Assembly (NCBI GenBank): GCA_964035545.1
Contig: OZ037765.1
Location: 33,045,504-33,109,503, forward strand
Length of the DNA stretch: 64,000 nucleotides
Source: Bugula neritina
Lineage: Eukaryota; Animalia; Bryozoa
Direction: 5' to 3'
Below, in pieces: positions 7,916 to 56,500 of the stretch. The first letter of the stretch is position 1. Every line of letters starts with the position of its first letter. Made by a program: the position numbers and the translations under genes. The notes under the pieces are model-generated. The model did no database searches and was not told where the DNA came from. It was given only the letters and a program-made list of their open reading frames with translations.

Positions 7916-7926
7916 CTCCAGAAGAC

Positions 7927-23579: not shown

Positions 23580-26500
23580 GTGAGTATTTAGTTGAGTATA
23601 TCTGAGTCAGACAACTCACACATATTGTATGATTTCAAGATGAATATGTTGATGACTCCTAAAAAGTTGTACTGTACATTATGTAATGCGATATTAAGAG
23701 TTGAATACACAGCAATGATATGATGTATATATTGTAACAATAACTTATATTCTTCTCTGATTGTATGTCTTTATATTGTATTTTTATATTACAGTATTAG
23801 TCAGCTGACTCAGTTAGAGGAACTAGACATAGGATACAATCCTCTCAACACAGTACCAGATGTTGTGTCATCACTCACATCACTCAAACAGTTGTATATG
23901 AGTGGATGTAGAATATCCAGTCTACCTGAGAGGTTTGTGTGTCACATGTTTATTATTTCTTCTTAACATCATACCCATCTCCCTTTAAAATATATTTATA
24001 CATAACTATTAGTATATAAGATATGTACAGGTTATAAATGTGTAGGTAAAAATTTGTATACCCACCTTAAGGTTTTGATAAAATACAATGAGATGGAAAA
24101 GGTGGAGTGCATCATGAATTGAAAAGCCACCCTCTCTCATGAAAAAGTGAATTATAATTTCGTTTTACTACTGTATTGAAATACCACAGTACTCCCTAGC
24201 TATAATGTAAAATAATATTGCTAAGCATTTTGCTAAAGGTTTCATCTGGAAAGAATACTTATAGATATAGAATATTATTGAAGAAAACAATGGTCTATAG
24301 GGGTTTGAGCTCGACAAAGGCTATTGATGATGTTAGGAAGACTATACCCAGTCATAATTGCTCCTGTGCCTCATGTGAATAAGTCCATAGCCCCATTTAA
24401 CAAAAACTCCTTTCATCAGGGATTTTCTCACAGGGATGATGATTAAATTTGCATCAGTTTTATTTTTAAATAAAATAATAGAATTATTTGTTATATAAAG
24501 CGATAACAGCTACTAGTGATATAATTTGTTACTGATCACTATCAAATCAAATGGTATTCATTATTAAATGAAACAAGTTAAGGTAAAATATCATGAGGAT
24601 TGCAAAAATATTTTTGTTTTATTGTTAGAATTTTTCAGGACTGTAAACTGCTGCATGATATTTTATTCTCTTCCTGTTGTAAATTTTTATATCATATTTT
24701 TATATTACAGTCTCTCCCAGCTGACTCAGTTAGAGGAACTAGACATAGGATACAATCCTCTCAACACAGTACCAGATGTTGTGTCATCACTGACATCACT
24801 TAAACAGTTGGATATGAGTCACTGTAGAATATCCAGTCTACCTAGGAGGTTTCTGTGTCACATGTTTATTATTTCTTCTTAACATCATTACCATCTCCCT
24901 TTAAATTATATTTATACATAACTATTAGTATATAAGATATGTACAGGTTATAAATGTGTATGTAGGTAGAATTTTGTACCCACCTTAAGGTTTTGATAAA
25001 ATACAATGAGATGGAAAAGGTGGAGTGCATCATGAATTGAAAAGCCACCCTCTCTCATGAAAAAGTGAATTATAATTTTGTTTTACTACTGTATTGAAAT
25101 ACCACAGTACTCTCCGGCTATGATGTAAAATTTTATTGCCACTAAGTATTTTGCTAAAGTTTTCATGTTGAACGAAGACTAGATATAGGATAATATTAAA
25201 GAAAACAGTGGTCTAGAAGCGTTAACCCTGACAAAGGCCATTGGTGATGTTAGGAAGACTACTCAGTCATAATTGCTCTTGTGCGTCATTTAAATAATTC
25301 CTTAGCCCAATTTAACAAATATCCTTCCCACCGGGTTTTTCACAGGGATAGTGACTATAAAGTTGCATGCATTTTACTTCATAAAAAAACAATGAAATCA
25401 CTTGTAATATGAAGTACTAATATCTACTGGTGATATAATTTGTTATTGATCAAATCGCATTCATTTTATTACATGAAACAATTTAAGGTAAAATATCACA
25501 AGGATTGGAAAAAACATTTTTGTTTTGTTGATAGAGTTTTTCAGAACTATAAACTGCTGCATGATATTTCATTATTTTCCTGATGTAAATTTTTATATCA
25601 TATTTTTGTATTACAGTCTTTCCCAGCTGACTCAGTTAGAGATACTATACATACAACGGAATCATCTCAACACAGTACCAGATGTTGTGTCATCACTCAC
25701 ATCACTTAAACAGCTGGATATGAGTTACTGTAGTAGAGTTGGTCTACCTGAGAGGTTTGTGTGTCACATGTTTATTACTACTTCACAACATCACTATTAC
25801 TACTCTGTAACCTATATTTATACACAACTTATATAGTATATATAATATAACATACAGGATACAGAGTATAGCTATAGTTTTTGTACTTAGCCTGAGTTCC
25901 CTGTGTTAGATAAGGAGCTGGTAAAGGTGCAGTGTAAAAATTGGAAAAACTTTAAACCTCTTCAAATGACTATGTGCAGGATGATGAAAGGAGTTGTATT
26001 ACTTATATATGAATATGTAAGATAGTTTACAATAATGTGTAAAGTTTGGAAAAGATACCCTCTTTCTATATGACCAGAAGCTGAATTATAAATTAGGAGT
26101 TGTATTATTTACATACGAATATTTTGTGTAGTTTAGAATAATTGTATGCATTATATGTTATTAGGAATTAAATATACAGCAATAATGTGGTTTATATTTT
26201 ATATATTACCATTAAATTGTCTGTATGCGTAGGGTCACACAACGCGGGTTTTCTGCATGGGGGTCCAAATTTTAGGGCACCTGTTCTGGGAACAACTTGC
26301 CACACAATGCATGGATTGTGGGTGCGGGAGCTCATTGGCTAACGAACTTGGAGTTTAACATTACTGCTCGCCTACAGACATTTGTTTTTTAAATTTACAT
26401 CATCGGCAAAGTGACTTTCCATATTATAAAAGTGGAAATGAAAACTATATGAAACTGTTTTAATTTAGTTCGATAAAAATTAAACCTCGAATTGAAATTA

Positions 26501-29500
26501 AAAAAGTGTGCTTGCTAAATGGTAATTAGCCAATTACATCAAACCTACACAAGCTTTCTGCACTTCCGTCTCAGCATGTTATCTGCATGGGCACCCACAC
26601 ACAACAGCCCATTTTTGAGCTAGATGGGTTAATTCTCCCTGCATGTTGCCAGCAGGGGTCACCCGCGCCGTGTGGCTCTATGCTAAGCTGACTAAGTAGT
26701 TAGTAATAACTATGTCATAACTCATTATTCTTAGCAGTGAATAGAAAAAAGCTGCCTAAAACCAACCAGCAGCTCTGTGCAAAAACTCTTAAAACTTTCA
26801 TAAATTATACTATGCAGACCTGTTTACTCTGAATACTTTGAAACAAAACAGCATCCTAGGTTAAACACGAATATATATTGAAAACATAGTTTAGCATGTA
26901 TTGAACCAGAACTAGTAACATTCAGTCATGACAATATTGTGTGAAAATTTTACAATCTGAAGTGAATCTGTATTATATTTATGGCATTATATCAAGTACT
27001 ATTATCCTGCTTTATTCAGGATGTTATTTTGACTGATACTCAATATTTCCCGAAAATAAAAACATGTGATATTTGACTCATACTCATATAAGTACTGCAT
27101 GTTATACTTATATTGTATGCAACTTTGTTCTCTTCTTATATTCTGTATATCTTTATGTTCTAGTGTGGATCAGCTGACTCAGTTAGAGACACCAGACATA
27201 GTAGACAATAGCCTCAAGACAGCACCAGATGTTGTGTCATCACTTAAACAGTTGAACATGAATAGATGTGGAATATCCAGTCTACCTGAAAGGTTTGTGG
27301 TCGCATGTGTATCACTACTTCACAACGTAATTATTACCTTCCTTTATAATGTATTTATACACAACTTATAGAATATAGAATAAGTACAGGATACAGGATA
27401 TAGCTTTTTATTCAAACTTTTCAGGCTTAGTCTGAGATTCCTGTATTCTACAATGAAACGATAAGGGTGCAGTGTAAATATTTATAGAGCCACCCTCTTT
27501 CTCGACTCTGAATAGAAATATTGTAGTGAATTTTAGTATTGCATTAGTTAGTTATGTTATATTGAAAGGGTAACTCTATGTCGGACTGCCGCCATTCGGC
27601 CGACAGCTTCATGTCGACAGTATCATGTCATCAGGATGGCCTGATCGTGTTGGCCAATGAAACAGGACTGACAATTGATGAGTAGGCGGAGTTTCAAACG
27701 CGTAGTGGAAGCATGTTAGACAGCTTCATCGGCAGAGTGGATCGAGTTCTAGTAATGTGAAGTTGTATGCAAATCACTCTATATTATGTAATCGTGTGTG
27801 TTAATGTTAGTAGTTTTATTTTTGTATAGTTTGTAACAATAAAGTCTATTGTAATTGTGAGAAACCTGGTGAAGTAGCTTTATATAAGTAGACCCACTAA
27901 TTATATAGTGAATCAGAAATTCACTACGGTGGTGGCAGCGGTGGGATCTTTCTTATAATAAGTGCTCCTAGCCAGGGAGTAAAACAATGGCCGACGACGA
28001 GGACGTGCCCGATCAGGAACCAGTAGTGATGGAGGAGGATGACATAGGCGGCCCAGCACTGCCTATGGACAGGTATCACTTACGTGCTCCCATCATTTCA
28101 GGAGAAGAGGATGTGGAGCAATTTATTACTGAGTTTAGTAATGTGGCAGCCATCTGTCGATGGCCTGCCAGGGTGACTCTGATCTAGCTACGGTTGTGTC
28201 TGACAGGGCCGGCTAAACCCTATGGGATAGGCCAAGATGCTGGTGACATATTTGAAGCATTGAGAGCTCGGTTTAGGTTAACCGCTCGAGATGCTCGCGT
28301 GCAGCTTCAAGGACTTAGGAGAAACCCTAAGACTAACTTGCGAGAGCACGCATCCGTAGTCGAACGACTGACACAAGTCGCGTATGGCGACTTGCCTGCT
28401 GATAGTCGACAGAGCTTGGCACTGGATGCATTCCTCCAGTCTAATAATAACCTCGTGCTAAAGTAACACCTGCTGGTAGGCGAGGTTGATACAATGGAGC
28501 GAGCTCTCAGGCTTGAAAATGCCTATTTCCAAGTCGACAGTACATGCTGTACATGTCGCCACGGTGGCAGCCGACGAGCCGACTAGCTTGACCACAAGCT
28601 TGGTTCGCGAGTTGTTAGCCGAAATCAGGGAACTACGCCAGCAGTCGACAGCTGAACGACCTACCAGGCCGCCATTAGTGGTCGACGGCAAGGGGAACCC
28701 CATATGCTGAGGTTATAGTAGTGTTGAGCACTTCATACAAAGTTGCCCCCATGGTAGAGGAAGGCAGTTAAATGGAAACGGCCAATGGTAGACTCCGCCA
28801 ACCGTGGGCCTCGGTTTAACCCTCCGAGGCCAAGGCCCGAACCCAATGGGGTGAGGAGGCCTCCTTCGCCAGAATGGCAAGCCCCCGGGAGAGTTAGCAG
28901 GCCGCAAAGCCCGCCAAAACCTCCGGCTTGGGCACTCAAAAATTGCTTTGAAGGTTTGCCTGATGAGGGGATGTATGACGCGTGGGAGCATGACAGGGAT
29001 TTTCTTCGGTTGCCCACACGAGCGCAGGTCCGAGCATTCACTCGGCCGCCCGTGTTTGAGCAAGTCTGAGATGTAGCCCACTTGCCCACGCGATGTCGAC
29101 GACTCTCTCGCAAACGGAAAGCACAGGTGCATCCCCAACTCCATGCACATGAGGTGTCACCTCAAGAGACGAACCGCTCAGTGAGCGCCCAGCCATATGA
29201 GACCAGCTATTTCCTCCCCGGTAAACTTGCCGAAAAAGCGGCAACTGTTCTATTAGACACTGGGTATACCAGAAATCTTCTGAGCCGGCGTCTGTTAGAC
29301 ACACTCAGTGCCAGGGACAGGGCTAGCCTGGAACCACATGACGGGGAACACGGCACGTTGGCGGACAGGTCGTGTTTTCTTTTCTATGAGGTAGTAGAGT
29401 TTACTGGTAGAGTTCGTGATCAGGTGATCAGTGAGACCTGTATCGTCAGTCAACTCAAGGAGGATGCCATCTTAGGCATGCCATTTCTGAAGCGACACAG

Positions 29501-32500
29501 GTGCCACATTGACTTCAATAAGTCGGCGGTGGTGGTGGCCGGGCGTGAGCTGGCCTGTGTCGACCGATTTTGCCGGCCCTTGGTGGGGGGAGTGCAAGTG
29601 GTACAGCGCTGCGCTGTACCTGGGCACTCTTGGGCTACAGTTTGTTGCAGAGTGAACTGTAGGGAAATCTCCAAGTTGGAAGTGGTGGAAAGTGCACTGG
29701 GGGGCGTCCAGCTTGCTAAGAGTCTGAATAGACTGGATGAGCGGGGGGAGTTCCTAGTCCAGGGTGTGAATCTTTTCACGGAGCCGGTAGACTTGCTGGC
29801 TGAGTCCCTAGTGGGGAAGTTCCACTCTGTAGAGGAGGAGGATGTCGGCCCGGCTCTGGAAACAGCAGACAGAGGCTGGCGGGTTCCCACTAGGGACGGC
29901 AGAGGGCCGGTACCTGAACATGTAGCAGAGTTGTACAGGGATGCCTGTGAAGGCTGTGAGAGTAAGCGGTAACGCCTAGTAATGGCGCAGTTACTTTCTG
30001 AGTACAAGGACGTGTTCAGCTGCGGCGACCATGACATGGGCCGAGCGAAGGCTGTCTGTCATGAGATACCCCTGGCGGCGGGAACGGTGCCCATCCGGCA
30101 GCCGACCCGCCAGTTAGGTCCTGAGAAGGAAAGGGAAGTGAGCCGACAGGTGCAAGACTTTCTGAATCGGGACCTGATTGAACCAGGCCAGCGGGCCTGG
30201 AGTCTTCCAGTTGACCTGGTTTGGAAAAAGGATGGGAGCTGGAGGTTTTGCGTTGACTCTCACAGGCTGAACAGCACGACCATCAAGGACGCTTACCCTC
30301 TTCCTAGGATCGACGAGTCGCTAGATGCCTTAGCTGGTAGCAAGTTCTTTAGTACGTTGGACTTGTTAAGCGGGTATTGGCAGGTGCCCCTGAGTCCTGA
30401 AGCACAAGACAAGGCCGCGTTTATTACGCGGGATGGGCTCTGGAAATGGAAGGTGTTGCCGTTCGGACTTACGTCCGCACCGGCCACCTTCCAGCGACTC
30501 ATGGAGCAGATCCTGAGTGGGCTGCTCTGGAAGACCTTGTTCATCTATCTCGATGACGTCATTGTCACCTCCCCCGACTTCGACACTCATGTCAGTCGGC
30601 TCAGAGAGGTGTTTGACAGACTTCGAGCTGCTGGTCTGAAGCTCAAGCCCTCAAAGTTTGCGTTACTGCAACAAGAGGTTAAGTACCTGGGCCATGTAGT
30701 TGGTCGAGACGGGATCGCCATCGACCCCGAGAAGGTACGGGCTGTGAGGGACTGGGAGATTCCTGGCGACCTCCCTGAATTGCGGGCATTCCTGGGGCTG
30801 GTAGGGTACTATCGTCAGTACATACCGGGTTTTGCAGGAATTCGGCAGCCACTAAACTGGCTGACAGCAAAGGGAGTGCGATGGCATGGAAGCATACAGA
30901 ACAGCAGGCATTTAACCACCTCAAGGATCGCTTGGTATAGGCGCCCATCTTGGCGTACCCTGACCCGGCGAAAGAATACATTTTGGATACTGATGCCAGT
31001 AACCACAATGTGGTGGCTGTGCTGTCTCAGGTCCAAGATGGTCGCGAGGTGGTGGTAGCTTACTATAGTAAGGCCCTGTTGGCGCCTGAGATGAACTACT
31101 GTACAACCAGGAGAGGACCCCTGGCGGTAGTCAAGGCGGTTAAACACTTTAGACCGTATCTGTATGGGTGTACGTTCAGATTACAAACGGATCATGCGTC
31201 TTTGATATGGCTGTGTCGACGGGTTGAATCATCAAGCCAAGTGGCGCGCTGGCTGGAAATCCTGGCAGAGTTTTCTCATCGGATAGATCACCGACCCGGT
31301 AAGAAACACGGCAATGCCGACGGACTCAGCCGCCACCAGGCAAATGGGTGTAAGCAATGCCAAAATATCGAGCGTAAGGATGGTGGACCCCCCCGCTCGG
31401 ACGTTGAGGAACAGTTGGGGAAAGCAGGTGCATATAGCTGGGAAGAAGGACAACTTCGGTCCGAATCCCCTAAGGAGGCTGTTACCAACCTTCACGCAAA
31501 CCCCACGCTGCTCAGGAACGTCAAAGAGCTGTGTCGGCTCCAAGCTACACTACCAGGGGTGGTAGCCGACCTAGTCTGGGCCAAGAAGGAGGGACGGCAG
31601 ACTAGTAAGACCGAGCAGCAGGTGAAGAGTGAAGAGTTTAGGTATTTCTGCAATTGCTGGGACTACCTCTGGCTTAACGGCGAGGGGCTGTTAACGATAA
31701 CGTTAGCAGCCGGCACCAATCGCCGTGAATGAGAGAGGGTAGTCTGTCCGTCTGCTCTGAGGCGGGAGTTGATCATTTACACCCATAGGCAAGCTCATGC
31801 AGGAGCCAGGCGTGTTACTCAGTGTCTTCAACTCCAATGATTTTGGCCCGGTATTACCCGGGATGTCCGACTCCGGGTGCGGAAGTGTGAGGTATGCCAA
31901 GCTAGTCAGCATGGCCGCTCTACTGATACTGCCGGGAGGCGCTGCCACCATGCCGGTCGTCCGTGGCAGGTAGTTGCTGTAGATCTGCTGGGCCCCATGC
32001 CCACGACAGTCAGAGGTAATAACTGGATATTGGTGTTAACTGACCATTTCACGCAGTGGGCTGATGCACTGGCTATTTCAGATGCGTCGGCACCGACGGT
32101 GGCCAGAGCTTTTGATCAGCAGGTGTTTTGCTATTTCGGCTTGTTAGAACAGATCTACTCTGATCAAAGCGCCCAGTTTCAGTCGCAACTCATGAGCAAT
32201 CTTTGTAAAACGTGGGGGTAAACCAGAGTCGGACGACCCCGTACCACCCGCAAGGGAATGGGGTTGTGGAGCGGAACAACCGGATGCTAATTTACTCACG
32301 GAGAAGCCTGCTTATCGGTAACAGTCAGGAAGAGTGGGACTCGGTGTTGCCGCAAATCATGCGAGCTTACCGTAGTACCCCTCACTCCAGTACGCTGGAG
32401 ACCCCTAATTTTCTCAGAGAAACCAGGGTTCCTGAACTTACCATATTCCGGCTCCAGAGAGCAGCGTCTATGATTACGTTAATGAGCTCGTGAAATGCAT

Positions 32501-35500
32501 GAGGACAGCTCACGAGGTGCTACGTGAGCAGCAGTGACAGGTCAGGAGTGGTGACTCTGACGACCCCCCTTTGTATAAGGTGGGAGACTTGGTCTGGATG
32601 ACCAGTCATTGCCGGCGGCGCGAACAGGCGGCTAAGTTACAGCAAAAGTTTGTGGGTCCACAAGGTGAAACGGTCTGGACAAGTGTCGATCCAGAACGAG
32701 GCACGGCCAAAACTGTACTGGGCGAGCCCTGACGCAGCAGGACAGGCCCCTCCGCTCTAAAAAGCTTGCACGACTCCCTCCTATGAGAGGGCGAGGCATG
32801 GCATATAGAGAAATAGAGGAGGTGCTGCCAGATCAGGAGGGAGAGGCCGACGTGCCGACCGATCCGCCCCGGCCGCCTACACTCCAGGAGGAGGCGACCG
32901 ACACACCGGAAGACCGGTCTGAGCCGGCCCCACCACCAGTGGAGCCAGCCGACATGCCTGTCGCTCCGGATGAGATGGTAATTTCTCAGATTCACGAGGA
33001 AGAGGCAACTAGGGAGGAGCCACCCGTATTAGTTAAATCCCCCCCCCCGTACTGGCGACACCACCGGTGGTGGTATAATCACCAGTACCAGCAAATCCTC
33101 CAGTACAGTTGGAACATAGTCAGCGTACTAGGACGCCACCATCTGATTTAAGAGACTTCTGGTGTGACATGGTCGACATGCTCCGTATTTTATAGCCTGT
33201 CGACTTGTACAAAAAAAGTCTGGGGGCAAGGTAATTGATAGTGGCGGATAGAATAGGTCAGCCGAGGGGTCAGCAGAGCAAAGCCAACTCAATAGCGCAT
33301 GGGGTGGTACATAACCACTCTAGCTGTGAGCGCTCTTTTCAGTTACAACCAGCAAACAGGCAGCACTTCTTTTTGCAGTAAATAAATTTGGCTACTACGA
33401 GCCCTATATAAACAGACAGCGAACATTATGTCTAATGCAGCAACTGTTTTGGAGGGTGAGACTGAAGCTGTGTCTGCTGAGATACAGGCACTACTCGATA
33501 CACCGACAGCAGCATGGGACAACATGTGTCAGAGGAGAGGATTGACATGTTGTCCGACATTCACTTATCAACAGTGTCGGACCAATCGACTACAACGACT
33601 AACCAGACTGTTAAACAAGTTGACATTACTGAACTAACTGGCGGACCGCTTGAATTGCCACAAGCTTTGTTACGGCGTACTACCTGGACAACTAGACAGA
33701 CGAAAACTCTAATACAGGCACTGATAGGGACTGATGACAATAGGCGGTGTGATGAATGCAGACGAACTTTCTCGACTATGAAACAACTCAAAATACACAT
33801 GCCACAACATTTTACTGTAACCTTCTGTCCCTGTGGAGTCCACCACTTCTACAGGGGCGCTATACTGTGACACCAAAGGAATCAGAACTGTTACATCGGA
33901 CACCTATACAAAATTGACGCCGACTCATACACTGAATTTAGAGAGATGATACTGCTTCATGTGACCGACCCAGATCGACGCCAGACGCCACTAGACCAGT
34001 TCCCCGCGACCCGAACAACGGTGGAAAGCGATTCAGACGCAGGCCCCCAGCCTCTGGAGACCACGAGGACAACACCAGCCCCTGAGGTGACGACTCAGCC
34101 TCTCCAAATTCTTGTGTCCCGTGCCGGACGCACAATAGAAGTAGACTCCCCACCCCTGACCACAACTACCTCCTTCTTCCCTAGTCGCCGACAGAAGAAG
34201 AGAAAGAGCCCTAGTGACCGGACTAACAAAAATACTATCCCCGACCAGTCTCTATTGACAGATGTAAAGAAGTTACAGAGGCGTATGGCGTATGTACATA
34301 TATGGAGTGGGTCCTTTCATACGACATCAGAGAATTTACAGTATGGTTGAGCATAACCAACTTTTTAGAGGACTATTTGAAGGCTCTCAACTGAAAACTA
34401 GATGACTTCCGCTGCTGCTTTGCTTCACCGTATTTATTGCTATAGTCAAGCTTTCCTAATCTGTTTCCCTGTGCACTGTTTTCAGTATGAAATTTTGCAT
34501 CATTCTGAAAATGTTTGCATACTAGTTTAATTACACTGTTGGCTTACATTATCGTTTGGTCTTGGATTAAATGTATGTTTCTTTTATAAATTGATGGCAG
34601 ACAGATTTTAACTAAAAAAAATACAAACTTAAGTCTAAAACCTGGTGTGCCCTGTTATAATTAACATATGAAAATAATTGGTGGGGCAAGTTGTACCTGG
34701 TTCAACTTGCCCCACTTCCTGTGTGGTTCAACTGACCTCACACTATCACGGGCTACATATTATTGTCAATATCTGCTGTGAATGAAATATTTCTGCAAGT
34801 TTATGTCATTGTACAGCTTTGAAAGCATGTTGACAATACATGCCTAAATTTATTTGACTGTGCTCTTAAAATTTGAGAAGCCATGTAACTGTTTATGAAA
34901 AATATAAAGTTTTAGTTTGCTCATTTTTCATGCAAAATTGTGAAAAATACTCGCTTGAACCTGAAAACTTCTGCTTGGAGTTTATTTGTTTCTATATATT
35001 TTTATATATTTATATATTTTCTATATTGAAAATATAATCTGACATGTATTAAATTAAAACTGGTAATATTCAGTCTATGAGATAGTGCGTGTAAATTGTA
35101 CAATGTGGAGTATATATGTATTATATTTACTGAATTCATTATATGAGGTACTATTATCCTGCTTTATTCAGGATGTTATTTTGACTGATACTAAATAGTT
35201 TATGAAATACAGAGATGTGATATTTGACTCATACACATGCCAGTATTGCATATTATCCTCATACTTTGCTTTGTTTTAATGCATGTCTTTATATTACAGT
35301 TTCTCCCAGCTGACTCAGTTAGAGATACTAAACATAGGAGACAATACTCTCAACACAGTACCAGATGTTGTGTCATCACTCACATCACTTAAACAGTTGA
35401 AGATGAATAGATGTGGTATATCCAGTCTACCTGAAAGGTTTGTGTGTCACATGTTTATTTTGTTATTTCTTCTTAACATCATAACCATCTCCCTTTAATT

Positions 35501-44500: not shown

Positions 44501-47500
44501 CCGGCCCCACCACCAGTGGAGCCGGCCCCACCACCAGTGGAGCCAGCCGACATGCCTGTCGCTCCGGATGAGATGGTAATTCCTCAGATTCACGAGGAAG
44601 AGGCAACTAGGGAGGAGCCTCCCGTATTAGTTAAATCCCTCCCCGTACTGGGGACACCACCCGTGGTGGTATAATCACCAGTACCAGCAAATCCTCCAGT
44701 ACAGTTGGAACGTAGTCAGCGTACTAGGACGCCACCATCTGATTTGAGAGATTTCTGGTGTGACATGGTGGATATGCTCAGTATTTTATAGCCTGTCGAT
44801 TTGTACAAAAGAAGTTCGGGGGCGAGGTAATTGATAGTATGCTACCCAGTGGCGGATAGAATAGGTCAGCCGAGGGGTCAGCAGAGCAAAGCCAACTCAA
44901 TATCGCATGGGGTGTTACATAACCACTCTAGCTGTGAGCACTCTTTTCAACTACAACCAGCAAACAGGCAGCACTTCTTTTTGCAGTAAATAAATTTGGC
45001 TACTACGAGCCCTATATAAACAGACAGCAAACATTATGTCTAATGCAGCAAATGTTTTAGAGGGTGAGACTGAAGCTGTGTCTGTTGAGATACAGGCACT
45101 ACTCGATACACTGACAGCAGCATAAGACAACCTGTCAGAGGAGAAGATGGACATGTTGTCCGACATTCACTTATCAACAGTGTCGGACCAACCGACTACA
45201 ACGACTAACCAGACTGTTAAACAAGTTGACATTACTGAAATAACTGACGGACCGCTTGAATTGCCACAAGCTTTGTTACGGCGTACTACCTGGACAACTA
45301 GACGGACGGAGACTGTAATACAAGCACTGAAAGGGACTGATGACAATAGACGGTGTGATGAATGCAGACTGACTTTCTCGATTATGAAACAACTCAAAAT
45401 ACACATACCACAACATTTTACTGTAACTTCCTATCCCTGTGGAGTCCACCACTTCTACAGGGACGCTATACTGCGACACCAAAGGAATCAGAACTGTTAC
45501 ATCGGACACCTATACAAAGTTGACGCCGACTCCTACACTGAATTTAGAGATCTGATACTGCCTCATGTGACCGACCCAGATCGACGCCAAACCCTACTAG
45601 ACCAGTTCCCCGCGACCCGACTGACGGTGGAAAGTGATTCAGACGCAGACTCCCAGCCTCTGGAGACCACGAGGACAACACCAGCCCCTGAGGTGACGAC
45701 TCAGCTTCTCCGTATTCTCATGTCCCGTGCCGGGCGCACAATAGAAGTAGACTCCCCACCCCTGACCACAACTACCTCCTTCTTCCCTAGTCGCCGACAG
45801 AAGAAGAGAAAGAGCCCTAGTGACCCGACTAACAAAAATACCATCCCCGACCAGTCCCTATTGACAGATGTGAAGAAGTTACAGAGGCGTATGGCGTATG
45901 TACGTAATTGGAGTGGGTCCTCTCATACGACATCAGAGAATACACGGTATGGTTGAGCATAACCAACTTTTTAGAGGACTGTTTGAAGGCTCTCAACTGA
46001 AAACTAGATGACTTCCGCTACTGCTTTGCTTCACAGTATTTATTGCTATAGTCAAGCTTTCCTAATCTGTTTCCCTGTGTGTTTTCAGTATGAAATTTTG
46101 CATCATTCTGAAAATGTTTGCATACTAGTTTATTTACACTGTTGGCTTACATTTTTGTTTAGTCTAGGATTAAATGTATGTTTCTTTTATAGATTGATGG
46201 CAGACATATTTTAACCAAGAAAAATACAAGCTTAAGTCTAAAGCCTGGTGTGCCCTGTTATAATTAACATATGAAAATAATTGGTGGGGCAAGTTGTACC
46301 GGTTCAACTTGCCCCACTTCCTGTGTGGTTCAACTAACCCCACACTGTCACGGCTACAAATTATCGTCGATATCTGCTGTGAATGAAATATTTCTGCAAG
46401 TTTATGTCATTGTACAGCTTTGAAAGCATGTTGACAATACATGCCTAAATTTATTTGACTGTGCTCTTAAAATTTGAGAAGCCATGTAACTGTTTATGAA
46501 AAATATAAAGTTTTAGTTTGCTCATTTTTTATGCAAAATTGTGAGAAATACTCGCTTGAACCTGAAAATTTCTGCTTGGAGTTTATTTGTTTCTATATAT
46601 TTTTATATATTTATATATTTTCTATATTGAAAATATAATCTGACATGTATTAAATTAAAACTGGTAATATTCAGTCTATGAGATAGTGCGTGTAAATTGT
46701 ACAATGTGGAGTATATATGTATTATATTTACTGAATTCATTATATGAGGTACTATTATCCTGCTTTATTCAGGATGTTATTTTGACTGATACTAAATAGT
46801 TTATGAAATACAGAGATGTGATATTTAACTCATACACATGTCAGTATACTGCATATTATCCTCATACTTTGCTTTGTTTTAATGCATATCTTTATATTAC
46901 AGTCTCTCTCGGCTGACTCAGTTAGAGAAACTAGACATAGGAGACAATACTCTCAACACAGTACCAGATGTTGTGTCATCACTCACATCACTTAAACAGT
47001 TGAAGATGAATAGATGTGGTATATCCAGTCTACCTGAAAGGTTTGTGTGTCACATGTTTATTATTTCTTCTTAACATCATAACCATCTCCCTTTAAATTA
47101 TATTTATACATAACTATCAGTATAGAAGATATGTACAGGTTATAAATGTGTATGTAGGTAGAATTTTGTACCCACTTTAAGGTTTTGGTAAAATACAATG
47201 AGATGGAAAAGGTGGACTGCATCATAAATTGAAAAGCCACCTTCTCTCATGAAAAAGTGAATTACAATTTTGTTCTACTGCTGTATTAAAATACTCCAGT
47301 ACTCCCTAGCTATAATGTAAAACTCTATAGCTAAGCATTTTGCTAAAGTTTTCATGTGGAAAGAATACTAAATATAGAATATTAATGAAGAAAACAATAT
47401 GGTCTAGGGGTTTGAGCCCCGACAAAGGCTATTGATGATGTTAGGAAGACTACCCAGTCATAATTGCTCCTGTGCCTCATCTGAATAAGTCCATAGCCCC

Positions 47501-50500
47501 ATTTAACAAAAACTCCTTTCATCAGGGGTTTTCTCACAGGGATGGTGATTATAAACTTGCGTCAGTTTTATCTTTAAATAAAATAAAAAAAATCATTTGG
47601 TATATAAAGCAATAACAGCTACTAGTGATATAATTTGTTACTGATCACTATCAAATCAAATGGTATTCATTATTAGATGAAACAAGTTAAGGTAAAATAT
47701 CATGAGGATTGCAAAAATATTTTTGTTTTGTTGTTAGAATTTTTCAGAACTGTAAACTGCTGCATGATACTTTATCCTCTTCCTGTTGTAAATGTTTATA
47801 TTATATTTTTATATTACAGTTTCTCCCAGCTGACTCAGTTAGAGGAACTAGACATAGGAGACAATACCCTCAACACAGTACCAGATGTTGTGTCATCACT
47901 CACATCACTTAAACAGTTGGATATGAATAGCTGTGGTATATCCAGTCTACCTGAAAGGTTTGTGTGTCACATGTTTATTATTTCTTCTTAACATCATAAC
48001 CATCTCCCTTTAAATTATATTTATACATAACTATTAGTATATAAGATATGTACAGGTTATAAATGTGTATATAGGTAGAATTTTGTACCCACTTTAAGGT
48101 TTTGGTAAAGTACAATGAGATGGAAAAAGTGGAGTGCATCATGAAGTGAAAAGCCACCCTCTCTCATAAAAAAGTGAATTATAATTTTGTTCTACTGCTG
48201 TATTAAAATACTCCAGTACTCCTTAGCTATAATGTAAAATTCTATTGCTAAGCATTTTGCTAAAGTTTTCATGTGGAAAGAATACTAGATATAGGATATT
48301 AATGAAGAAAACAATGGTCTAGGGGTTTGAGCCCCGACAAAGGCTATTGATGATGTTAGGAAGACTATACCCAGTCATAATTGCTCCTGTGCCTCATCTG
48401 AATAAGTCCATAGCCCCATTTAACAAAAACTCCTTTCATCAGGGGTTTTCTCACAGGGATGGTGATTATAAACTTGCGTCAGTTTTATCTTTAAATAAAA
48501 TAAAAAAAATCATTTGTTATATAAAGCAATAACAGCTACTAGTGATATAATTTGTTACTCATCACTATCAAATCAAATGGTATTCATTATTAGATGAAAC
48601 AAGTTAAGGTAAAATATCATGAGGATTGCAAAAATATTTTTGTTTTGTTGTTAGAATTTTTCAGAACTGTAAACTGCTGCATGATACTTTATCCTCTTCC
48701 TGTTGTAAATGTTTATATTATATTTTTATATTACAGTTTCTCCCAGCTGACTCAGTTAGAGGAACTAGACATAGGAGACAATACCCTCAACACAGTACCA
48801 GATGTTGTGTCATCACTCACATCACTTAAACAGTTGGATATGAATAGCTGTGGTATATCCAGTCTACCTGAAAGGTTTGTGTGTCACATGTTTATTATTT
48901 CTTCTTAACATCATAACTATCTCCCTTTAAATTATATTTATACATAACTATTAGTATATAAGATATGTACAGGTTATAAATGTGTATATAGGTAGAATTT
49001 TGTACCCACTTTAAGGTTTTGGTAAAGTACAATGAGATGGAAAAAGTGGAGTGCATCATGAAGTGAAAAGCCACCCTCTCTCATAAAAAAGTGAATTATA
49101 ATTTTGTTCTACTGCTGTATTAAAATACTCCAGTACTCCTTAGCTATAATGTAAAATTCTATTGCTAAGCATTTTGCTAAAGTTTTCATGTGGAAAGAAT
49201 ACTAGATATAGGATATTAATGAAGAAAACAATGGTCTAGGGGTTTGAGCCCCGACAAAGGCTATTGATGATGTTAGGAAGACTATACCCAGTCATAATTG
49301 CTCCTGTGCATCATCTGAATAAGTCCATAGCCCCATTTAACAAAAACTCCTTTCATCAGGGGTTTTCTCACAGGGATGGTGATTATAAACTTGCGTCAGT
49401 TTTATCTTTAAATAAAATAAAAAAAATCATTTGTTATATAAAGCAATAACAGCTACTAGTGATATAATTTGTTACTCATCACTATCAAATCAAATGGTAT
49501 TCATTATTAGATGAAACAAGTTAAGGTAAAATATCATGAGGATTGCAAAAATATTTTTGTTTTGTTGTTAGAATTTTTCAGAACTGGATTAGGTATAGCT
49601 TTTAGTTCGTCTAGCATATTTTTATCACATATTTCGTTTCTAGTTTTAGTATCTTTATTAAGTGCGTAACATATGTCGTGTTTCATAGCTATAGCGTCGT
49701 CTCGATCTACCGGTTTACTTCATTTTTTAGGAGTCATATCGTCATTCATACGCTTATCTAATTTAGTACCGGGACCTAAAAAATTATGATTGGGGTAATG
49801 CAATTCAACGGGTAAATTGTTTATTAAATTATTCATTAAACCCGACCCTTTTTTAATAAATGTATTCTTTTTACATCCGCATTGACTGCAATTACCGTAA
49901 CCCATTAGTCTTTTATTTTTACTTTCTCTTTCTCCATAATTGAGAGCTTTTGTTTTAATTTTACACTTACAACAATACATTTATTATAATAAATGGAAAT
50001 AGAAAATCTTTTGTGGAAAAATGAATTTAATCGTAATAATAATCCTTTACTTCCTAAAAGCAAAAGAGGACTTATCGTTGGAAAGTCTGGATGCGGTAAA
50101 ACTACGTTACTTTGTAACTTACTATTACAACCTAATTGGCTCGATTATGATAAACTTATGATTTACGGTAAAAGTCTTTCTAAACCCGAATATATAAATA
50201 TGAAAAAAGCTTTCGAGCTCGGAATAACTAAAAAAGAAATTTTAAATTTCTTTAAAAATAGTGAAACGATAGTAAATTCGGGTATAAACGTAAATCGTAT
50301 TTTAAAAAATTACACTACGGGTAACGGTAATATAAACGCTGAATTTATCGAATCTAGTGACGACGTTTATGACCCTTGTGATAAAGATTTAATAATATTC
50401 GATGATTTAATGTTGGAAAAACAAAAAAAAGGGGCGAAAGTTATTGTACGCGTGGTCGTCATAGCAATGTCGTTTGCTTTTATTTATCGCAAAACTATTT

Positions 50501-53500
50501 TAAGCTACCTAAACACACTAATCGAGAAAACGCTAATTTTATTTGCTTATTTCCTCAAGATGGAAAAAACTTAAATCATATATATCAAGATCACGTAACT
50601 GGAGATATAACATTAAACGAATTTAAAGACTTTTGTTATAAAGGATAGCAAAAACCTCACGGATTTATTACTTTAGATCTTTCTTCCTCAAAAAATAATG
50701 GAAAGTATAGGCACGGCCTAGACGAGTTTAATATTCTTCAATAAATGAGTGTTTATAAGTTTGGTGAACCATTAGCAAAAGCTAAAAAAGAAAACTATAT
50801 CGAAAGAGTCGTAACTAAAAATGATAACGTTCTTATTCAATCTTTTAGTACAACGATTAATATAGGAATGTTATTGGGATATATAGTAAATAAACCGATA
50901 GAACTAAAATACGCTTTATTAGAATTTCAACATCTTCCAGCTAATAATAATAATCCTTTGTATTGGAAAGATAAAAAATTAACTTTAATTATCGGCGATG
51001 TTAATAACCCTCTCGAACACGATACTATAAAGAATATATAATTCAAGGAGGCGTCGCGCGCGTAAAAATACCTATGTTAGAATATATTGAAGCTGATAAA
51101 AATATTGGATTAGTATTACACTGCTCAAGCGATTATACTAGTCGTAAACCCGATGACGTTACGGTTAATGACGTCCCGCCTATAACTTTACCGTTTGAAT
51201 TAGTGTCGCTGAAACTTTTTTACGTTCATAAATGAGTGTTTATAAATTCGGAGGAAGCGGAAAAACGCAAATAGATACAAAAAAATTCGTTTTAATAAAC
51301 AGTAGTAGTACTCTTACGGGTACGCTAGATATGGGAAAAAATAAAATATCTAGAGTCATCGATCCGGCTGACGATCAAGACGCGGCTACAAAAACATACG
51401 TTAATAATACGAGTATGCCTAAAACATTACACCCCAATAATCAATTAACTATATCAACTGATGACGGACGCGTTATAGATAGCGATTTAAAAGTTGATAA
51501 CGTTGTTACGAAAACTAATGTATCTAATTACGCCGTACCTCTTATACAAAATCCAACCAAAAAATTAACTGTTTCAACTACTTCGGGTAGCGTTGAAGAT
51601 AGTAATTTAAGCGTTACCGATGTTGTTACGACTAATAATATAAATAATTTTGCTATACCAAAAATACACCCGTCGAATGAAAAACTAACCGTTTCAACTA
51701 CTTTAGGTAATATTGCTGATAGTAATTTAAGCGTTAACGATGTTATTACGACTAGTAATATAAATAATTTTGCTATGCCTAAAATACAACCGTCAATCGG
51801 AGGTAAATTATCAATGCTTTCGAGCGAAGGTAATATCGTAGAAACCGGTATAAGCATCGCAGATATTATTACTACTTATAATATAAATAATCACGCTATT
51901 CCTAAATTACAAGGAGCGGTTGGTAATAAATTAGTAATATCAACGAGCAATGGTAATATAATAGAATCTACAGAATCTCAACCCACATTTCCAAGTTATA
52001 ACGTTTAAACACTGTTGCATATTAAATTATTATATTCTCAGCGTATAATAATTTATTACATCAACTCTAAAATTATATTTATCTTCTTTAAAAAACTAGT
52101 AAAATAATTATACTAGTAGTAGGAAGTGGTTGCGTTCTGGGACAACACCCTGACACCGGAGAGTCGAAGACTCGGCGGGGGAAGGGGGTTGTCCCAGAAC
52201 CAACTACTTCCTACTACTACTACTTCACAACGTAATTATTACCTTCCTTTATAATGTATTTATACACAACTTATAGAATATAAAATAATATACAGAATAC
52301 AGAGTAGCTATAGCTTAATATTTAAACTTTTCAGGCTTAGCCTTAGATTCCTGTATTATACAATGAAATGATAAGGGTGCAGTGTAAATATTTATGGAGC
52401 CACCCTCTCTCTTGACTCTGAATAGAAATATGAATGAACTTGCACTTTCCTACAAGATAACCATAAGGAAAAGATTTATTAAATGAGTTTCAATGAGAAT
52501 AAATTGTAACATAGAAGATATGATTATCCATGTGAATTTATTCTATAGCATGGATAGTTCAAATTAATCTGTAGCAACTATTACTTGGTAAGTCGTGAGA
52601 ATGAAACTAATCGTGTTAATTTACTTCATATATAGTACACTTACATTTATATTTTGGGTTTAGTATGTAAACACTTCATAGACACTAGCCTTTAGGGGAG
52701 GGTGAATAATATAAACGCACTACATACTTAAGGATAGCATAACACAACCAATCTAATTAGATGCCACTATCCAGCTGCACTTATCCAATTGCTCTCTCAA
52801 TCCACTATAATTAGTTAGTCTCCTCCTTTGTTCACAGCGTACCTTGGTAGTATAGCAATGTAAACACTAGTAGGCCGAGTGTATTAGAGACGCTAAGCAT
52901 TAGGATAACAGAATAAGGACAAGAGAGTTGTTCTTTCGATATACACAGGAGCACAACTCCTTACAATATTACTGACTCTAAGCATTACTATTGGTTAACA
53001 TTAGCTGTAATGCTTTTGTTACAAGTTGTTCTTGTTTTATAGCAGTTGTAGGTGTTATTACAGTTATACTCTTTTATTAGAGATTAAATATTATCAAGTT
53101 GAGCTATATTATGTTCCTGTAAAATCTGTTTGTAATAAAAACTTGTGTACAAGTGCCTCTCATTATAAAAAGATAATTTCATTGTTTGAAAAGTTTCACT
53201 TTTTTATTTTTTAAAGGCTTACTTTAAAAAATTCAACTTTTTCCAAAAAATCTTTCGAGAATAATTTTTTATATTAAATTCTCTATCTAACAAAAATTAA
53301 AAAGATAATTGAGCTTGAAAATGTTCTATTTACTCAAAAAAAACTCCGTTAAAGCTTCATGAATGCATGTTAGTCCACATCTTTCAAATATATATAATTT
53401 CAAACTTCCCATGGTATTTCTAAAAATTGCAAGAAACTGGACAAGTTGTTTTGGCTGAGTTGTTTTGCCTTTTAGTTTAAGTAAGCCAGGAAAAGAATAC

Positions 53501-56500
53501 ATTTTGTAATTAAGGTTTAATTGTTCAAAATATTTGTAAGCTTCAAATAGAAATTGGTATTTCAATAATTTTTTATTTTGCTTTTCGTTCCAATTTTCTA
53601 TTTCAACAAATATGATGCGATGTAGGTCAAATAAATTTATACGTTAAAAATTACATGCAATAGCTGATACATCTTAAAACATGCAGTTGTGACTTCCTGC
53701 CTATATCTGTATTGCATAAAATACTTTTATTGCATTTAATTTTAGTCTCTTCTCACTATGCATATCTTTATATTACAGTCTCTGTCAGCTGACTCAGTTA
53801 GAGATACTAGACATAGGAGGGAATCCTCTCAACACAGTACCAGATGTGGTGTCATCACTCACATCACTTAAGCAGTTGGATATGAATAGTTGTGATATAT
53901 CCAGTCTACCTGAGAGGTTTCTGTTTATTACTATTTTACAACATTGTTATTGCCTTCTTTTAACATATATTTATACACAGCTTATAATATATAACATAAG
54001 ATGCAGTATATAAAAGTTTAGCTCAAACTTTAGACTCAGTCTAAGTTTGTGGAAAAATGCAATGAGATGTGAAGGGCCGAGTGTAATATGATATAAAAAG
54101 TTATCCTATATCGCTAGATAAAGGTGGATTATTATTTTGTGTCTACTGCACTATTGAAATACTACAGGATCTCAGCTATGTAAAATTCTATACTAGGTAT
54201 TCTGCTAAAGATTTCATGAAGAAAGAATATTAGTTATAGAATATTATTAAGGAAAGCAATGACTTATATGAAGTACTGGTACCATCTCACAACTGTATTT
54301 TGTTACTCACTATTATACATCGAGGGATGGTATTTGTATTACTAAAAGAAAGAATTAGGGATGACAATATATCCTGACAATTTAAAATCCATTTACTGTT
54401 TCATTGATAATTTTTTTACAAACTAGGAATCATTGTTATATAATTCTTTATTCTTTTGCTGTTGTATGCTTTGTATTACAGTCTCTCCCAGCTGACTCAG
54501 TTAGAGAAACTAGACATAGGAAACAATCCTCTTAACACAGTACCAGATGTTGTGTCATCACTCACATCACTTAAAGAGCTGAAGATGAATAGTTGTGGTA
54601 TATTCAGTCTACTTGAAAGGTTTGTGTGTCGCATGTTTATTACTACTTCACAATATCATTATTACCTCACCTAGCAGTATTTATATTCAACTTGTTGTAT
54701 CTAAAATATAATATACAGAACACATAGAGTAGCCATATTCTGACTGTCCTGTGTTATACAATGAAATAGTTAAAAGAGTAGAGTGTAATATAGAAATCCA
54801 CCCTTAAGCATGGTCATGGATTAGAGCCAATGCCAGGATATTATAGTGATAAAATATTCAGTCATTTATAAAAAACACAACATATTTATTCTTGAAGTAT
54901 CACGGTGCCGTATATAAAAGTTTATATTTATGCAAGTATTTTGTTAAGCATTTGATAAACATATATATTCCCTAGAGTTAGGGGTACATGACTATGACTG
55001 TTGGTCACAGGTTAATAAATGATGAAATAGTCATAAGAAGAAGTGTGAAATTAATACCTGCAGTAACAAATAGTTATAGCATCAACTAGCTTTATTTGTC
55101 ACCCATTTTAAAAATAAAAATAACAGCCGACTCCCTAATGTATATACTATGTATAGTAATGTGGACTATATATAGTAATGTATACTATGTATAGTAATGT
55201 ATACTATGTATAGTAATGTATACTATGTATAGTAATGTATACTATGTATAGTAATGTATACTATGTATAGTAATGTATACTATGTATAGTAATGTATACT
55301 ATGTATAGTAATGTATACTATGTATAGTAATGTATACTATGTATAGTGCTGTATAATATGTATAGTAATGTATACTATATATAGTAATGTATACTATGTA
55401 TAGTAATGTATACTATGTATAGTAATGTATACTAAGTATAGTAATGTATACTATGTATAGTAATGTATACTATGTATAGTAATGTATACTATGTATAGTA
55501 ATGTATACTATGTATAGTTATGTATATTATGTATAGTAATGTATACTATGTATAGTAATGTATAATATGTATAGTAATGTATACTAAGTATAGTAATGTA
55601 TACTATGTATAGTAATGTATACATAGTATAGTGATGTATACTATGTATAGTAATGTATAATATGTATAGTAATGTATACTATGTATAGTAATGTATAATA
55701 TGTATAGTAATGTATACTATGTATAGTAATGTATACTATGTATAGTAATGTATACTATGTATAGTAATGTATACTATGTATAGTAATGTATACTATGTAT
55801 AGTAATGTATACTATGTATAGTAATGTATACTATGTATAGTAATGTATACTATGTATAGTAATGTATACTATGTATAGTAATGTATACTATGTATAGTAA
55901 TGTATACTATGTATAGTAATGTATACTATGTATAGTAATGTATACTATGTATAGTAATGTATACTATGTATAGTAATGTATACTATGTATAGTAATGTAT
56001 ACTATGTATAGTAATGTATACTATGTATAGTAATGTATACTATGTATAGCAATGTATACTATGTATAGTAATGTATGTATGATATGTAAAGTGACAAAAT
56101 GATCTACTAAGTCAGTAAACTATTTTATAAACTATGTGTATTTATATAAAGCTTTAACATTGCCTTTTTCTTAAGTAGTATAATTGGCTGAATTGCAAGA
56201 TTAGTTACTGGTGATTAGTTTACTGGCGTATTTGTATTTATATTTATATAGTATTCTGAGCCTCTCAAACCTCCAACATCTGGATATCTCTAATGAAACC
56301 TTTCAGGACAATCAGGAAACTTCACACCAGATCACATGTTTACCAGATAACTTCAGCCAATTATCTAGCTTGATATATCTTAACCTCAGTGGAAATGATA
56401 CCCTAAAAGCTCTAACACCAGAGATAGCTGACATGCCTCTATTAATGTTAATAACTACTCAGGGTTGTGAGTCATTGACTTCACCACCATATGAAGTTTG

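What the first reader, a model, noticed from the sequence alone, without database searches (positions are those of the whole stretch)
23795..54619. Array of 15 interchangeable phase-2 LRR cassette exons: a combinatorial receptor-diversification module
Seen: every cassette encodes two LRRs, is a multiple of 3 (138, 129 or 144 nt), starts and ends in phase 2 and has near-identical splice sites (mostly TTACAG|T ... AG|GTTTGT). The flanking constant exons (ending 23579, starting 56252) are also phase 2. Any subset, order or copy number therefore stays in frame, and no cassette has a stop or frameshift although the neighbouring mobile-element ORFs are full of them. Established parallels: Dscam alternative exons, lamprey VLR LRR cassettes and exon-shuffled LRR-Roco genes in the brown alga Ectocarpus. 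Inference: a variable recognition domain generated by exon skipping and/or unequal recombination, wired to a caspase.
Basis: partly seen in the sequence, partly recalled or inferred. Interest (0 to 1): 0.9.

Follow-up and report, generated by a model that had tools for sequence, protein, structure and literature searches.

The report
LRR exon array of ROCO-caspase gene
Fifteen near-identical exons, each encoding two leucine-rich repeats, form the fast-evolving sensor arm of one bryozoan LRR-Roc-COR-caspase gene; the variety was demonstrably made in the germline by duplication and exchange between sister genes, and whether cells also mix the exons by splicing could not be tested.

Summary
There are 15 plus-strand cassette exons: twelve of 138 nt, two of 129 and one of 144. 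Each encodes two 23-residue LRRs, and all are phase 2-2 with near-identical splice sites. They lie between a phase-2 constant exon (ends 23579) and the LRR-Roc-COR exon (starts 56252), and caspase exons follow. Exon lengths sum to an intact 1,781-codon frame.

The gene belongs to a family of at least 65 Roc-COR genes in a Bugula-like bryozoan genome. The cassette motif occurs about 360 times genome-wide. Neighbouring paralogs carry 6, 6-7, 7 and 21 cassettes.

Amino-acid variation sits on the LRR concave-face positions (pN/pS about 1.4, against 0.45-0.5 elsewhere).

The array, including its introns and embedded retroelement pieces, is 93-99% identical to the array of a paralog 240 kb away. The Roc-COR exons of the same two genes differ at a quarter of synonymous sites. 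So blocks of cassettes were recently duplicated and exchanged in the germline.

The nearest precedents are brown-algal ROCO LRR exon shuffling and the modular LRR exons of NLR genes. This scan had already noted the same family on two other pieces of this genome.

The parts
19067..19088 (+). Putative first coding exon (ATG, seven codons plus one base; donor gtactc; phase 1)
   Evidence: Read from the sequence. The stretch is 90% conserved in this frame with the paralog upstream region, and its phase fits the next exon. Inferred; no RNA support.
23348..23579 (+). Constant N-terminal exon, ending in phase 2 (AA|gtgagt). No known domain.
   Evidence: It is conserved just upstream of the first cassette in four paralogs. 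No Pfam hit and no Atlas hit.
23795..27292 (+). Cassettes 1-4: 23795-23932, 24711-24848, 25617-25754 and 27164-27292 (129 nt). This is the block A-A-C-D.
   Evidence: The block 23783-29031 is repeated at 38538-43801 with 94.3% identity.
27600..34950 (+). Decayed LTR-type retroelement inside the intron after cassette 4. Its protease, RT and RNase H ORFs are split over different frames.
   Evidence: Pfam RVT_1 3e-32 and RT_RNaseH 1e-29; GC 0.51-0.55. Partial copies lie at 36396-38240 and about 42100-46500.
35300..36347 (+). Cassettes 5-6 (35300-35437, 36210-36347)
38550..42062 (+). Cassettes 7-10: 38550-38687, 39466-39603, 40375-40518 (144 nt) and 41934-42062 (129 nt). This is the second copy of the A-A-C-D block.
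46903..48874 (+). Cassettes 11-13 (46903-47040, 47820-47957, 48737-48874), in three 917-bp units that are 96-99.8% identical.
49586..52218 (+). Mobile-element insertion in the intron after cassette 13. It carries a P-loop ORF at 49993-50574, a 120-bp tandem repeat, and a hairpin/TIR at about 52115-52215. It sits where a 129-nt cassette is expected: the intron start that normally follows that cassette survives at 52219-52431.
   Evidence: family D11; 63 matches, about 35 separate loci, on many contigs, many with 252-aa open frames. The same insertion is present in paralog P-a.
53779..54619 (+). Cassettes 14-15 (53779-53916, 54482-54619)
55143..56076 (.). 19-bp minisatellite (49 copies) in the last intron of the array
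   Evidence: It is conserved in paralog P-a and in a Bugula neritina contig at 95%.
56252..58281 (+). Large exon with about four further LRRs, the Roc GTPase (P-loop GQTMSGKT, DFGG) and COR. It starts in phase 2 and ends in phase 1.
   Evidence: Pfam COR-A 38.3 bits (cut-off 35.3) and Roc 21.9 bits; motifs; boundaries.
58549..58972 (+). Two short linker exons (58549-58623, 58830-58972)
   Evidence: tblastn with Bugula neritina proteins; splice sites read.
59819..61981 (+). Caspase exons 59819-59992, 60083-60314 (SHG His and ACRE Cys), 60915-61034, 61233-61342 and 61832-61981 (TAG stop)
   Evidence: Pfam Peptidase_C14 at 34.3 and 47.9 bits (cut-off 21.4); boundaries read; homologs with Roc+COR+caspase are P0007, P0022 and P0031.

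Best explanation
The array is the germline-encoded LRR sensor domain of one large intracellular gene of about 43 kb. If every exon is included it has 24 coding exons and 1,781 codons.

The predicted protein has four parts: a short N-terminus of unknown fold, about 34 LRRs (30 of them from the 15 cassettes), a Roc-COR GTPase switch, and a C-terminal caspase.

The gene is one of at least 65 such genes in a Bugula-like bryozoan genome.

The array grew and keeps changing in the germline in three ways:
- tandem duplication of 0.9-kb exon-plus-intron units;
- duplication of a block about 14.7 kb long (repeat offset 14,755 bp) with four or more cassettes, which carried an intronic retroelement along;
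- unequal crossing-over or gene conversion with the arrays of neighbouring paralogs.

The symmetric phase is what lets these events survive. Selection favours amino-acid change on the concave beta-strand face and conserves the scaffold.

Inferred mechanism of the protein: the LRR solenoid binds a ligand, or guards a host target. This releases the Roc-COR switch to dimerise or oligomerise, and the fused caspase is activated by proximity. That would make it a one-chain sensor-plus-executioner for immunity, cell death or allorecognition.

Shown here: gene anatomy, family size, cassette-number variation, the pattern of variation, and the recent exchange. Inferred only: expression, inclusion of all exons, ligand binding and caspase activation.
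For: - Cassette anatomy and symmetric phase.
- Consistent splice phases across all 24 exons. Lengths sum to 5,346 nt, a multiple of 3.
- LRR, Roc, COR and caspase domains on one strand. Annotated bryozoan homologs combine LRR, Roc, COR and caspase (P0007, P0031).
- At least 65 scored Roc-COR exons from 134 candidates. The cassette motif gives 360 hits against 4 for the control.
- Cassettes per neighbouring paralog are 21, 7, 6 and 6-7 against 15 here.
- The a priori concave positions have pN/pS 1.46 and 1.36, against 0.45 and 0.51 for the rest. None of 10,000 random codon sets reached the observed pN.
- Higher-order duplications include transposable-element sequence.
- Array non-coding DNA is 93-99% identical to paralog P-a, but the Roc-COR exons of the two genes have pS 0.25, and P-a's Roc-COR exon is closer to P-b's.
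- For 11 of the 15 window cassette units, the nearest neighbour lies in P-a.
Against: - No transcript evidence of any kind was obtained, so it is not shown that the gene is expressed or that all 15 exons are included.
- The pN/pS figures are crude pairwise counts on short, non-independent repeats.
- All 15 cassette donors (gttt[g/c]t) lack the +3 purine that all 9 other donors of the gene have. This would fit regulated inclusion.
- Two cassettes (129 nt) are degenerate LRRs with no Pfam hit.
- Copy number within the three 917-bp units that are 96-99.8% identical (the last two 99.8%) could be an assembly error.
Confidence: 0.75

Rival explanations
1. The cassettes are alternatively or stochastically included, so one gene yields many receptor isoforms with different LRR number and composition.
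For: - Any subset stays in frame and stop-free.
- All cassette donors are non-consensus (T at +3 and +4), while all 9 other donors of the gene have a purine at +3.
- There is precedent for alternative splicing of modular LRR exons in NLRP3 (PMC6642158) and brown-algal ROCO genes (PMC11378527).
Against: - No RNA data could be obtained, and no cDNA-like product was found in the protein collection.
- No docking/selector-type complementarity was found.
- The weak donor is one inherited feature that every copy and every paralog shares, so it counts once.
- Germline processes already account for the diversity seen.
Confidence: 0.15
2. Somatic DNA rearrangement (VLR-like copy choice, or unequal mitotic recombination) reshapes the array within a colony and gives clonal receptor diversity.
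For: The array is clearly recombination-prone on evolutionary time. Bryozoans are colonial and clonal. The brown-algal ROCO literature raised the same idea (PMC3341825).
Against: - The germline gene is complete. Every cassette has canonical splice sites, and all lie in one orientation inside the gene.
- VLR loci, in contrast, have an incomplete gene with flanking cassettes that lack splice sites (established knowledge).
- There is no somatic data.
Confidence: 0.03
3. The array is not a working receptor domain. Either it is a decaying gene riddled with mobile elements, or its copy number is an assembly artefact.
For: - Four introns hold 2-8 kb of retroelement or other mobile DNA, and one expected cassette has been replaced by an insertion.
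- Cassettes 12 and 13 are 99.8% identical.
- The neighbouring paralog P-d has a stop in its Roc exon, and some paralog cassettes are broken.
Against: - All 24 exons of this gene are open with consistent phases.
- Scaffold codons have pN/pS 0.45, and the Roc-COR exon 0.33-0.39.
- Most copies differ by 4-15%, so they are separable in an assembly.
- Cassette arrays also occur in an independent Bugula neritina assembly and on JGI contigs.
Confidence: 0.07

Closest known systems
Brown-algal LRR-ROCO genes with LRR exon shuffling (Ectocarpus, Saccharina; PMC3341825, PMC11378527)
   Same: - An LRR domain N-terminal to Roc-COR, built from short symmetric-phase exons.
- A variable number of LRR exons between recent paralogs.
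- Positive selection on concave-face positions.
- A large lineage-specific family proposed as immune receptors.
   Different: - This is an animal, not an alga.
- There are two LRRs per 138-nt exon, rather than one per 72-nt exon.
- The C-terminal effector is a caspase.
- No orphan or antisense LRR exons occur in this window.
- Alternative splicing has been reported in the algae but is untested here.
Modular LRR exons of vertebrate NLR genes, e.g. NLRP3 (PMC6642158)
   Same: Each exon encodes a whole number of LRRs in a symmetric phase, so skipping an exon keeps both frame and fold. The protein is an intracellular sensor coupled to caspase activation.
   Different: - NLRs use a NACHT ATPase and recruit caspase through adaptors. 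Here a Roc-COR GTPase is fused directly to the caspase.
- The repeats here are 23-residue LRRs, not RI-like 28/29-residue repeats.
- The exon copies here are far more numerous and much younger.
MFHAS1/MASL1-type animal ROCO proteins (LRR-Roc-COR)
   Same: The domain order LRR-Roc-COR, with no kinase. RefSeq names the Watersipora homologs 'MFHAS1 homolog'.
   Different: - An added C-terminal caspase.
- Expansion to at least 65 genes.
- A cassette-built, hypervariable LRR arm.
- Only about 35% identity to the Watersipora proteins.
Lamprey VLR assembly and arthropod Dscam mutually exclusive splicing
   Same: Arrays of near-identical cassettes encode units of a recognition domain (LRR in VLR, Ig in Dscam).
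   Different: - VLR is an incomplete germline gene completed somatically from flanking cassettes that have no splice sites.
- Dscam chooses one exon per cluster, guided by docking/selector RNA pairing.
- Neither anatomy is present here.
Prokaryotic AP-GTPase (Roc-COR) conflict systems with N-terminal LRRs and variable C-terminal effectors (PMC8195603)
   Same: Fast-evolving LRR sensor, then a Roc-COR switch, then an effector domain, all in one polypeptide.
   Different: This is a eukaryotic, intron-rich gene, and its diversification operates through exon duplication.

Membership tests
ROCO (Roc-COR) proteins | Ras-like Roc GTPase domain with P-loop and switch motifs | tested here: met
   The exon carries GQTMSGKT and DFGG. 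Pfam Roc scores 21.9 bits, below its 27-bit cut-off, but close homologs carry PF08477.
ROCO (Roc-COR) proteins | COR domain directly C-terminal to Roc | tested here: met
   Pfam COR-A scores 38.3 bits against a cut-off of 35.3, at residues 340-405 of the same exon.
Caspase (peptidase C14) | p20/p10 fold with the catalytic His and Cys | tested here: met
   Peptidase_C14 scores 34.3 and 47.9 bits on two exons (cut-off 21.4), with a weak p10 match. SHG and ACRE motifs are present in exon 60083-60314. Catalytic activity was not tested.
Exon-shuffled LRR-ROCO receptors (brown-alga type) | Symmetric-phase LRR exons whose number differs between recent paralogs | tested here: met
   There are 15 cassettes here, against 21, 7, 6 and 6-7 in the four upstream paralogs.
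Exon-shuffled LRR-ROCO receptors (brown-alga type) | Diversifying selection on concave-face residues | tested here: met
   The 12 a priori positions have pN/pS 1.36-1.46, against 0.45-0.51 for the rest. This is a crude pairwise count, not a site model.
Exon-shuffled LRR-ROCO receptors (brown-alga type) | Orphan or antisense LRR exons in introns that serve as a reservoir | tested here: not met
   tblastn at E<=1 finds nothing beyond the 15 cassettes, on either strand.
Alternatively spliced cassette arrays (Dscam-like, or NLRP3-like skipping) | Several mRNA isoforms that differ in cassette content | not testable with these tools
The protein collection holds only single-cassette-sized proteins; the seven read were all genomic read-throughs.
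Alternatively spliced cassette arrays (Dscam-like) | Docking and selector RNA complementarity between a constant intron and each cassette intron | tested here: not met
   No 12-mer reverse-complement match shared by three or more cassette introns was found, apart from AT-only strings. This is a weak test.
VLR-type somatic assembly | Incomplete germline gene, with donor cassettes outside it that lack splice sites | tested here: not met
   The gene is complete, and every cassette has AG/GT sites and lies in one orientation between the gene's other exons.

The most novel reading that the evidence does not exclude
In a colonial animal, a family of about 100 LRR-Roc-COR-caspase genes uses its arrays of symmetric two-LRR exons as a combinatorial module as well as an evolutionary substrate. 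Regulated or stochastic exon inclusion, or mitotic unequal recombination, would give individual cells or zooids different receptors coupled directly to a death protease. That would be an invertebrate analogue of Dscam/VLR-style diversification, used for immunity or allorecognition.
Probability: 0.12. Interest if true: 0.9.

Novelty: new variant of a known kind. Interest (0 to 1): 0.6.

Why it matters
Bryozoans have no described immune receptor repertoire, and no paper in the searched library describes LRR-Roc-COR-caspase genes. Here a sensor, a GTPase switch and a death protease sit in one chain. The sensor arm is visibly remodelled by exon-block duplication and by exchange between paralogs, with selection on the binding face.

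This gives an animal counterpart to the brown-algal ROCO story. It also provides a concrete candidate family for innate immunity or colony allorecognition.

The open question, whether diversity is germline only or is also generated at the RNA or somatic level, is directly testable with one long-read cDNA amplicon.

Tried and rejected
- **RNA evidence.** I did not try again, and read laying was never usable.
- **Representative-protein search.** A search with one cassette against the representative proteins returned only generic LRR proteins of at most 48% identity. It was uninformative.
- **Cassette search with length-matched candidates.** This search returned 38 single-cassette-sized JGI proteins (61-174 aa); the seven read, including the longest, were all exon-plus-intron read-throughs, so there are no spliced products.
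- **Further paralog DNA.** The three minus-strand paralogs at 33.57-33.67 Mb were therefore counted only from motif hits.
- **N-terminal exon.** It has no Pfam or Atlas match.
- **Dscam-like pairing.** A k-mer test found none.
- **Bugula neritina counterpart.** The contig ends inside the array, so arrays could not be compared between species.
- **Joined spliced model.** The product length is arithmetic on exon coordinates, and no structure of the LRR arm was predicted.
Full report
**1. Checking the observation**

A blastn search with one cassette finds exactly 15 copies in the window. All are on the + strand, between 23.8 and 54.6 kb. A permissive protein-level search finds no further remnants on either strand.

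- **Lengths.** Reading the splice sites gives twelve exons of 138 nt, two of 129 nt (27164-27292 and 41934-42062) and one of 144 nt (40375-40518).
- **Frame.** In every exon only the frame offset by one base is open. Each exon therefore begins with the last base of a split codon and ends with two bases, which makes both flanking introns phase 2.
- **Splice sites.** Acceptors are ttacag (11), tcacag (2) and ttctag (2). Donors are gtttgt (13) and gtttct (2). AGGTTTGT occurs 15 times in the window against 3.6 expected.
- **Junctions.** All cassettes end in AG and start with T or G, and the upstream constant exon ends in AA, so no junction between any pair can make a stop codon.
- **Flanking exons.** The constant exon ends at 23579 (AA|gtgagt) and the Roc exon starts at 56252. 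Both are phase 2.
- **Content.** Each cassette encodes two 23-residue LRRs. Pfam LRR_4 ('2 copies') scores 33 bits against a cut-off of 27 on an A-type cassette. The two 129-nt cassettes match no LRR model and look degenerate.

**2. The gene around the array**

Splice sites read from the sequence give a coherent 24-exon model:
- 19067-19088, which carries the ATG and is conserved with a paralog;
- 23348-23579;
- the 15 cassettes;
- 56252-58281;
- 58549-58623 and 58830-58972;
- 59819-59992, 60083-60314, 60915-61034, 61233-61342 and 61832-61981, which ends in TAG.

All intron phases agree. The exon lengths sum to 5,346 nt, which is 1,781 codons plus the stop. This is arithmetic on coordinates.

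The large exon holds about four more LRRs, a Roc GTPase (GQTMSGKT, DFGG) and COR-A above Pfam's cut-off. The 3' exons are a caspase that keeps the His (SHG) and Cys (ACRE) motifs. The N-terminal 85 residues match nothing.

**3. Organism and family**

The closest public proteins are uncharacterised Bugula neritina proteins, at 76-90% identity over the part aligned. RefSeq 'MFHAS1 homolog' proteins of Watersipora subatra follow at about 35%, and some of these combine LRR, Roc, COR and caspase. The window therefore comes from a Bugula-like cheilostome bryozoan.

In its own 216-Mb assembly the Roc-COR exon has at least 65 scored matches out of 134 candidates. Eight of them form a close subfamily (80-83% identity at the amino-acid level) on the same chromosome, between 32.86 and 33.66 Mb. 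An 18-nt cassette motif occurs 360 times against 4 for the reversed control, in arrays on several chromosomes.

The array in this window is therefore one instance of a genome-wide architecture. The scan already holds two notes on the same family from other pieces of this genome. Their readings agree with mine, but I did not use them as evidence.

**4. How the array evolved**

The repeat unit is exon plus intron, about 916 bp, and the introns are conserved too.

There is a higher-order structure:
- 23783-29031 (cassettes 1-4 plus the start of an intronic LTR retroelement) recurs at 38538-43801 with 94.3% identity.
- 32662-36364 recurs at 44253-47974 with 91% identity.
- 46886-48669 recurs at 47803-49586 with 98% identity.

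Blocks of cassettes were therefore duplicated together with the mobile DNA in their introns.

I fetched about 195 kb upstream and counted cassettes in the neighbouring paralogs, anchoring each array by the conserved constant exon:

| Gene | Cassettes |
|---|---|
| P-a | 21 |
| P-b | 7 |
| P-c | 6 |
| P-d | 6-7 |
| this window | 15 |

Nearly all of these cassettes are intact. A few are broken: one lost its acceptor, one has a stop and one has a frameshift.

The most informative result concerns P-a, which lies 240 kb away:
- From about cassette 2 to the last array intron, the window's array is 93-99% identical to P-a's array. This includes the introns, the retroelement pieces and a second mobile element.
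- The 5' region is only 80-87% identical, the Roc-COR exon 88.6% and the caspase region 79%.
- The Roc-COR exons of the two genes differ at pS 0.25, and P-a's Roc-COR exon is closest to P-b's (pS 0.13), not to this gene's.
- For 11 of the 15 window cassette units, the nearest neighbour lies in P-a rather than in the same gene.

Neutral array sequence cannot be younger than the flanking coding exons under a single duplication history. The arrays must therefore have exchanged sequence recently, by unequal crossing-over or gene conversion limited to the array.

**5. Selection**

Amino-acid variation is concentrated in columns 9, 11, 13, 14 and 16, and in columns 34, 36, 37 and 39. These are the x positions of LxxLxLxxNxL, which by established LRR structural knowledge line the concave beta-sheet.

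I defined the 12 concave positions a priori. For them pN/pS is 1.46 (12 window cassettes) and 1.36 (45 cassettes including paralogs). For the other 33 codons it is 0.45 and 0.51. None of 10,000 random 12-codon sets reached the observed pN.

Exons are on average 88% identical, against 78% for their flanking introns. The cassettes are thus constrained as LRR scaffolds and diversified on the binding face. These are crude pairwise counts on non-independent repeats, and a site model is still needed.

**6.

Formal interchangeability is real, and germline unequal recombination is now well supported. Exon skipping or somatic change is neither supported nor excluded.
- All 38 proteins in the large collection that carry a cassette were single-cassette-sized (61-174 aa); the seven read, including the longest, were all genomic read-throughs into intron.
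- A search of the representative library gave only generic LRR proteins.
- A k-mer test found no Dscam-like docking/selector complementarity.
- The anatomy is unlike a VLR locus: the gene is complete, and the cassettes have splice sites and lie in one orientation.

One feature would fit regulated inclusion. All 15 cassette donors have T at +3 and +4, whereas all nine other donors of the gene have a purine at +3. This is one inherited trait shared by every copy and paralog, so it counts once.

**7. What is known**

Symmetric-phase LRR exons are an established architecture. Human NLR genes show 'strict exonic modularity' with alternative splicing in NLRP3 (PMC6642158). Brown-algal LRR-ROCO genes show one LRR per 72-nt exon, exon shuffling, concave-face positive selection and alternative splicing (PMC3341825, PMC11378527). 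Prokaryotic Roc-COR conflict systems combine fast-evolving LRRs with variable effectors (PMC8195603).

My literature searches found no description of bryozoan LRR-Roc-COR-caspase genes.

I therefore rate this a new variant of a known kind: an animal ROCO family with a fused caspase, and a cassette-built LRR arm that exchanges between paralogs.

**8. Verdict**

| Reading | Probability |
|---|---|
| Germline-built LRR sensor arm of a one-chain sensor-switch-caspase receptor | about 0.75 |
| Combinatorial splicing | about 0.15 |
| Somatic rearrangement | about 0.03 |
| Dead gene or assembly artefact | about 0.07 |

Long-read cDNA across the array is the decisive experiment.

Noticed in passing
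window 49586-52218: A mobile element carries a P-loop ORF (49993-50574) that gives 63 matches (about 35 separate loci) across many contigs of the genome, many with 252-aa open frames. It ends in a hairpin/TIR at about 52115-52215. It sits where a 129-nt cassette is expected. The same insertion, minus about 1.5 kb, is present in paralog P-a.
   Followed up: partly
window 8 cassette donors vs 19089, 23580, 58282, 58624, 58973, 59993, 60315, 61035, 61343: All 15 cassette donors are gttt(g/c)t, with T at +3 and +4. All nine other donors of the same gene have a purine at +3. The paralog cassettes share the odd donor.
   Followed up: partly
window 55143-56076: A 19-bp minisatellite (49 copies) lies in the intron before the Roc exon. 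It is conserved at 95% in a Bugula neritina contig (L021 7904-8839) and is also present in paralog P-a.
   Followed up: partly
window 135-709 and about 3239-8490; 62944-64000: The window starts with the last caspase exons of the upstream paralog. Next comes a stretch that maps onto a small Ras/Roc-like gene on the opposite strand in the B. neritina annotation (L021 17222-20124). The beginning of that stretch recurs after this gene at 62944-64000 (85% identity). The tandem unit therefore seems to be the big gene plus a small GTPase gene.
   Followed up: partly
window 11263-12224: A 26-bp minisatellite lies upstream of the gene and is also found upstream of paralog P-a (C1:32786251-32787141, about 91%). 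In the window, a minus-strand retroelement copy (14137-18607) separates it from the conserved 5' region at 18785-19112.
   Followed up: no
window 47820-47957 and 48737-48874: Cassettes 12 and 13 encode identical peptides, and their 638-nt units are 99.8% identical. This is either a very recent tandem duplication or the place where an assembly error in copy number is most likely.
   Followed up: no
G000:C1:33040336-33042318: The immediately upstream paralog (P-d) has an in-frame TAG in its Roc-COR exon and one frameshifted cassette (33038471-33038606). It is probably a pseudogene, which fits birth-and-death evolution in the cluster.
   Followed up: no
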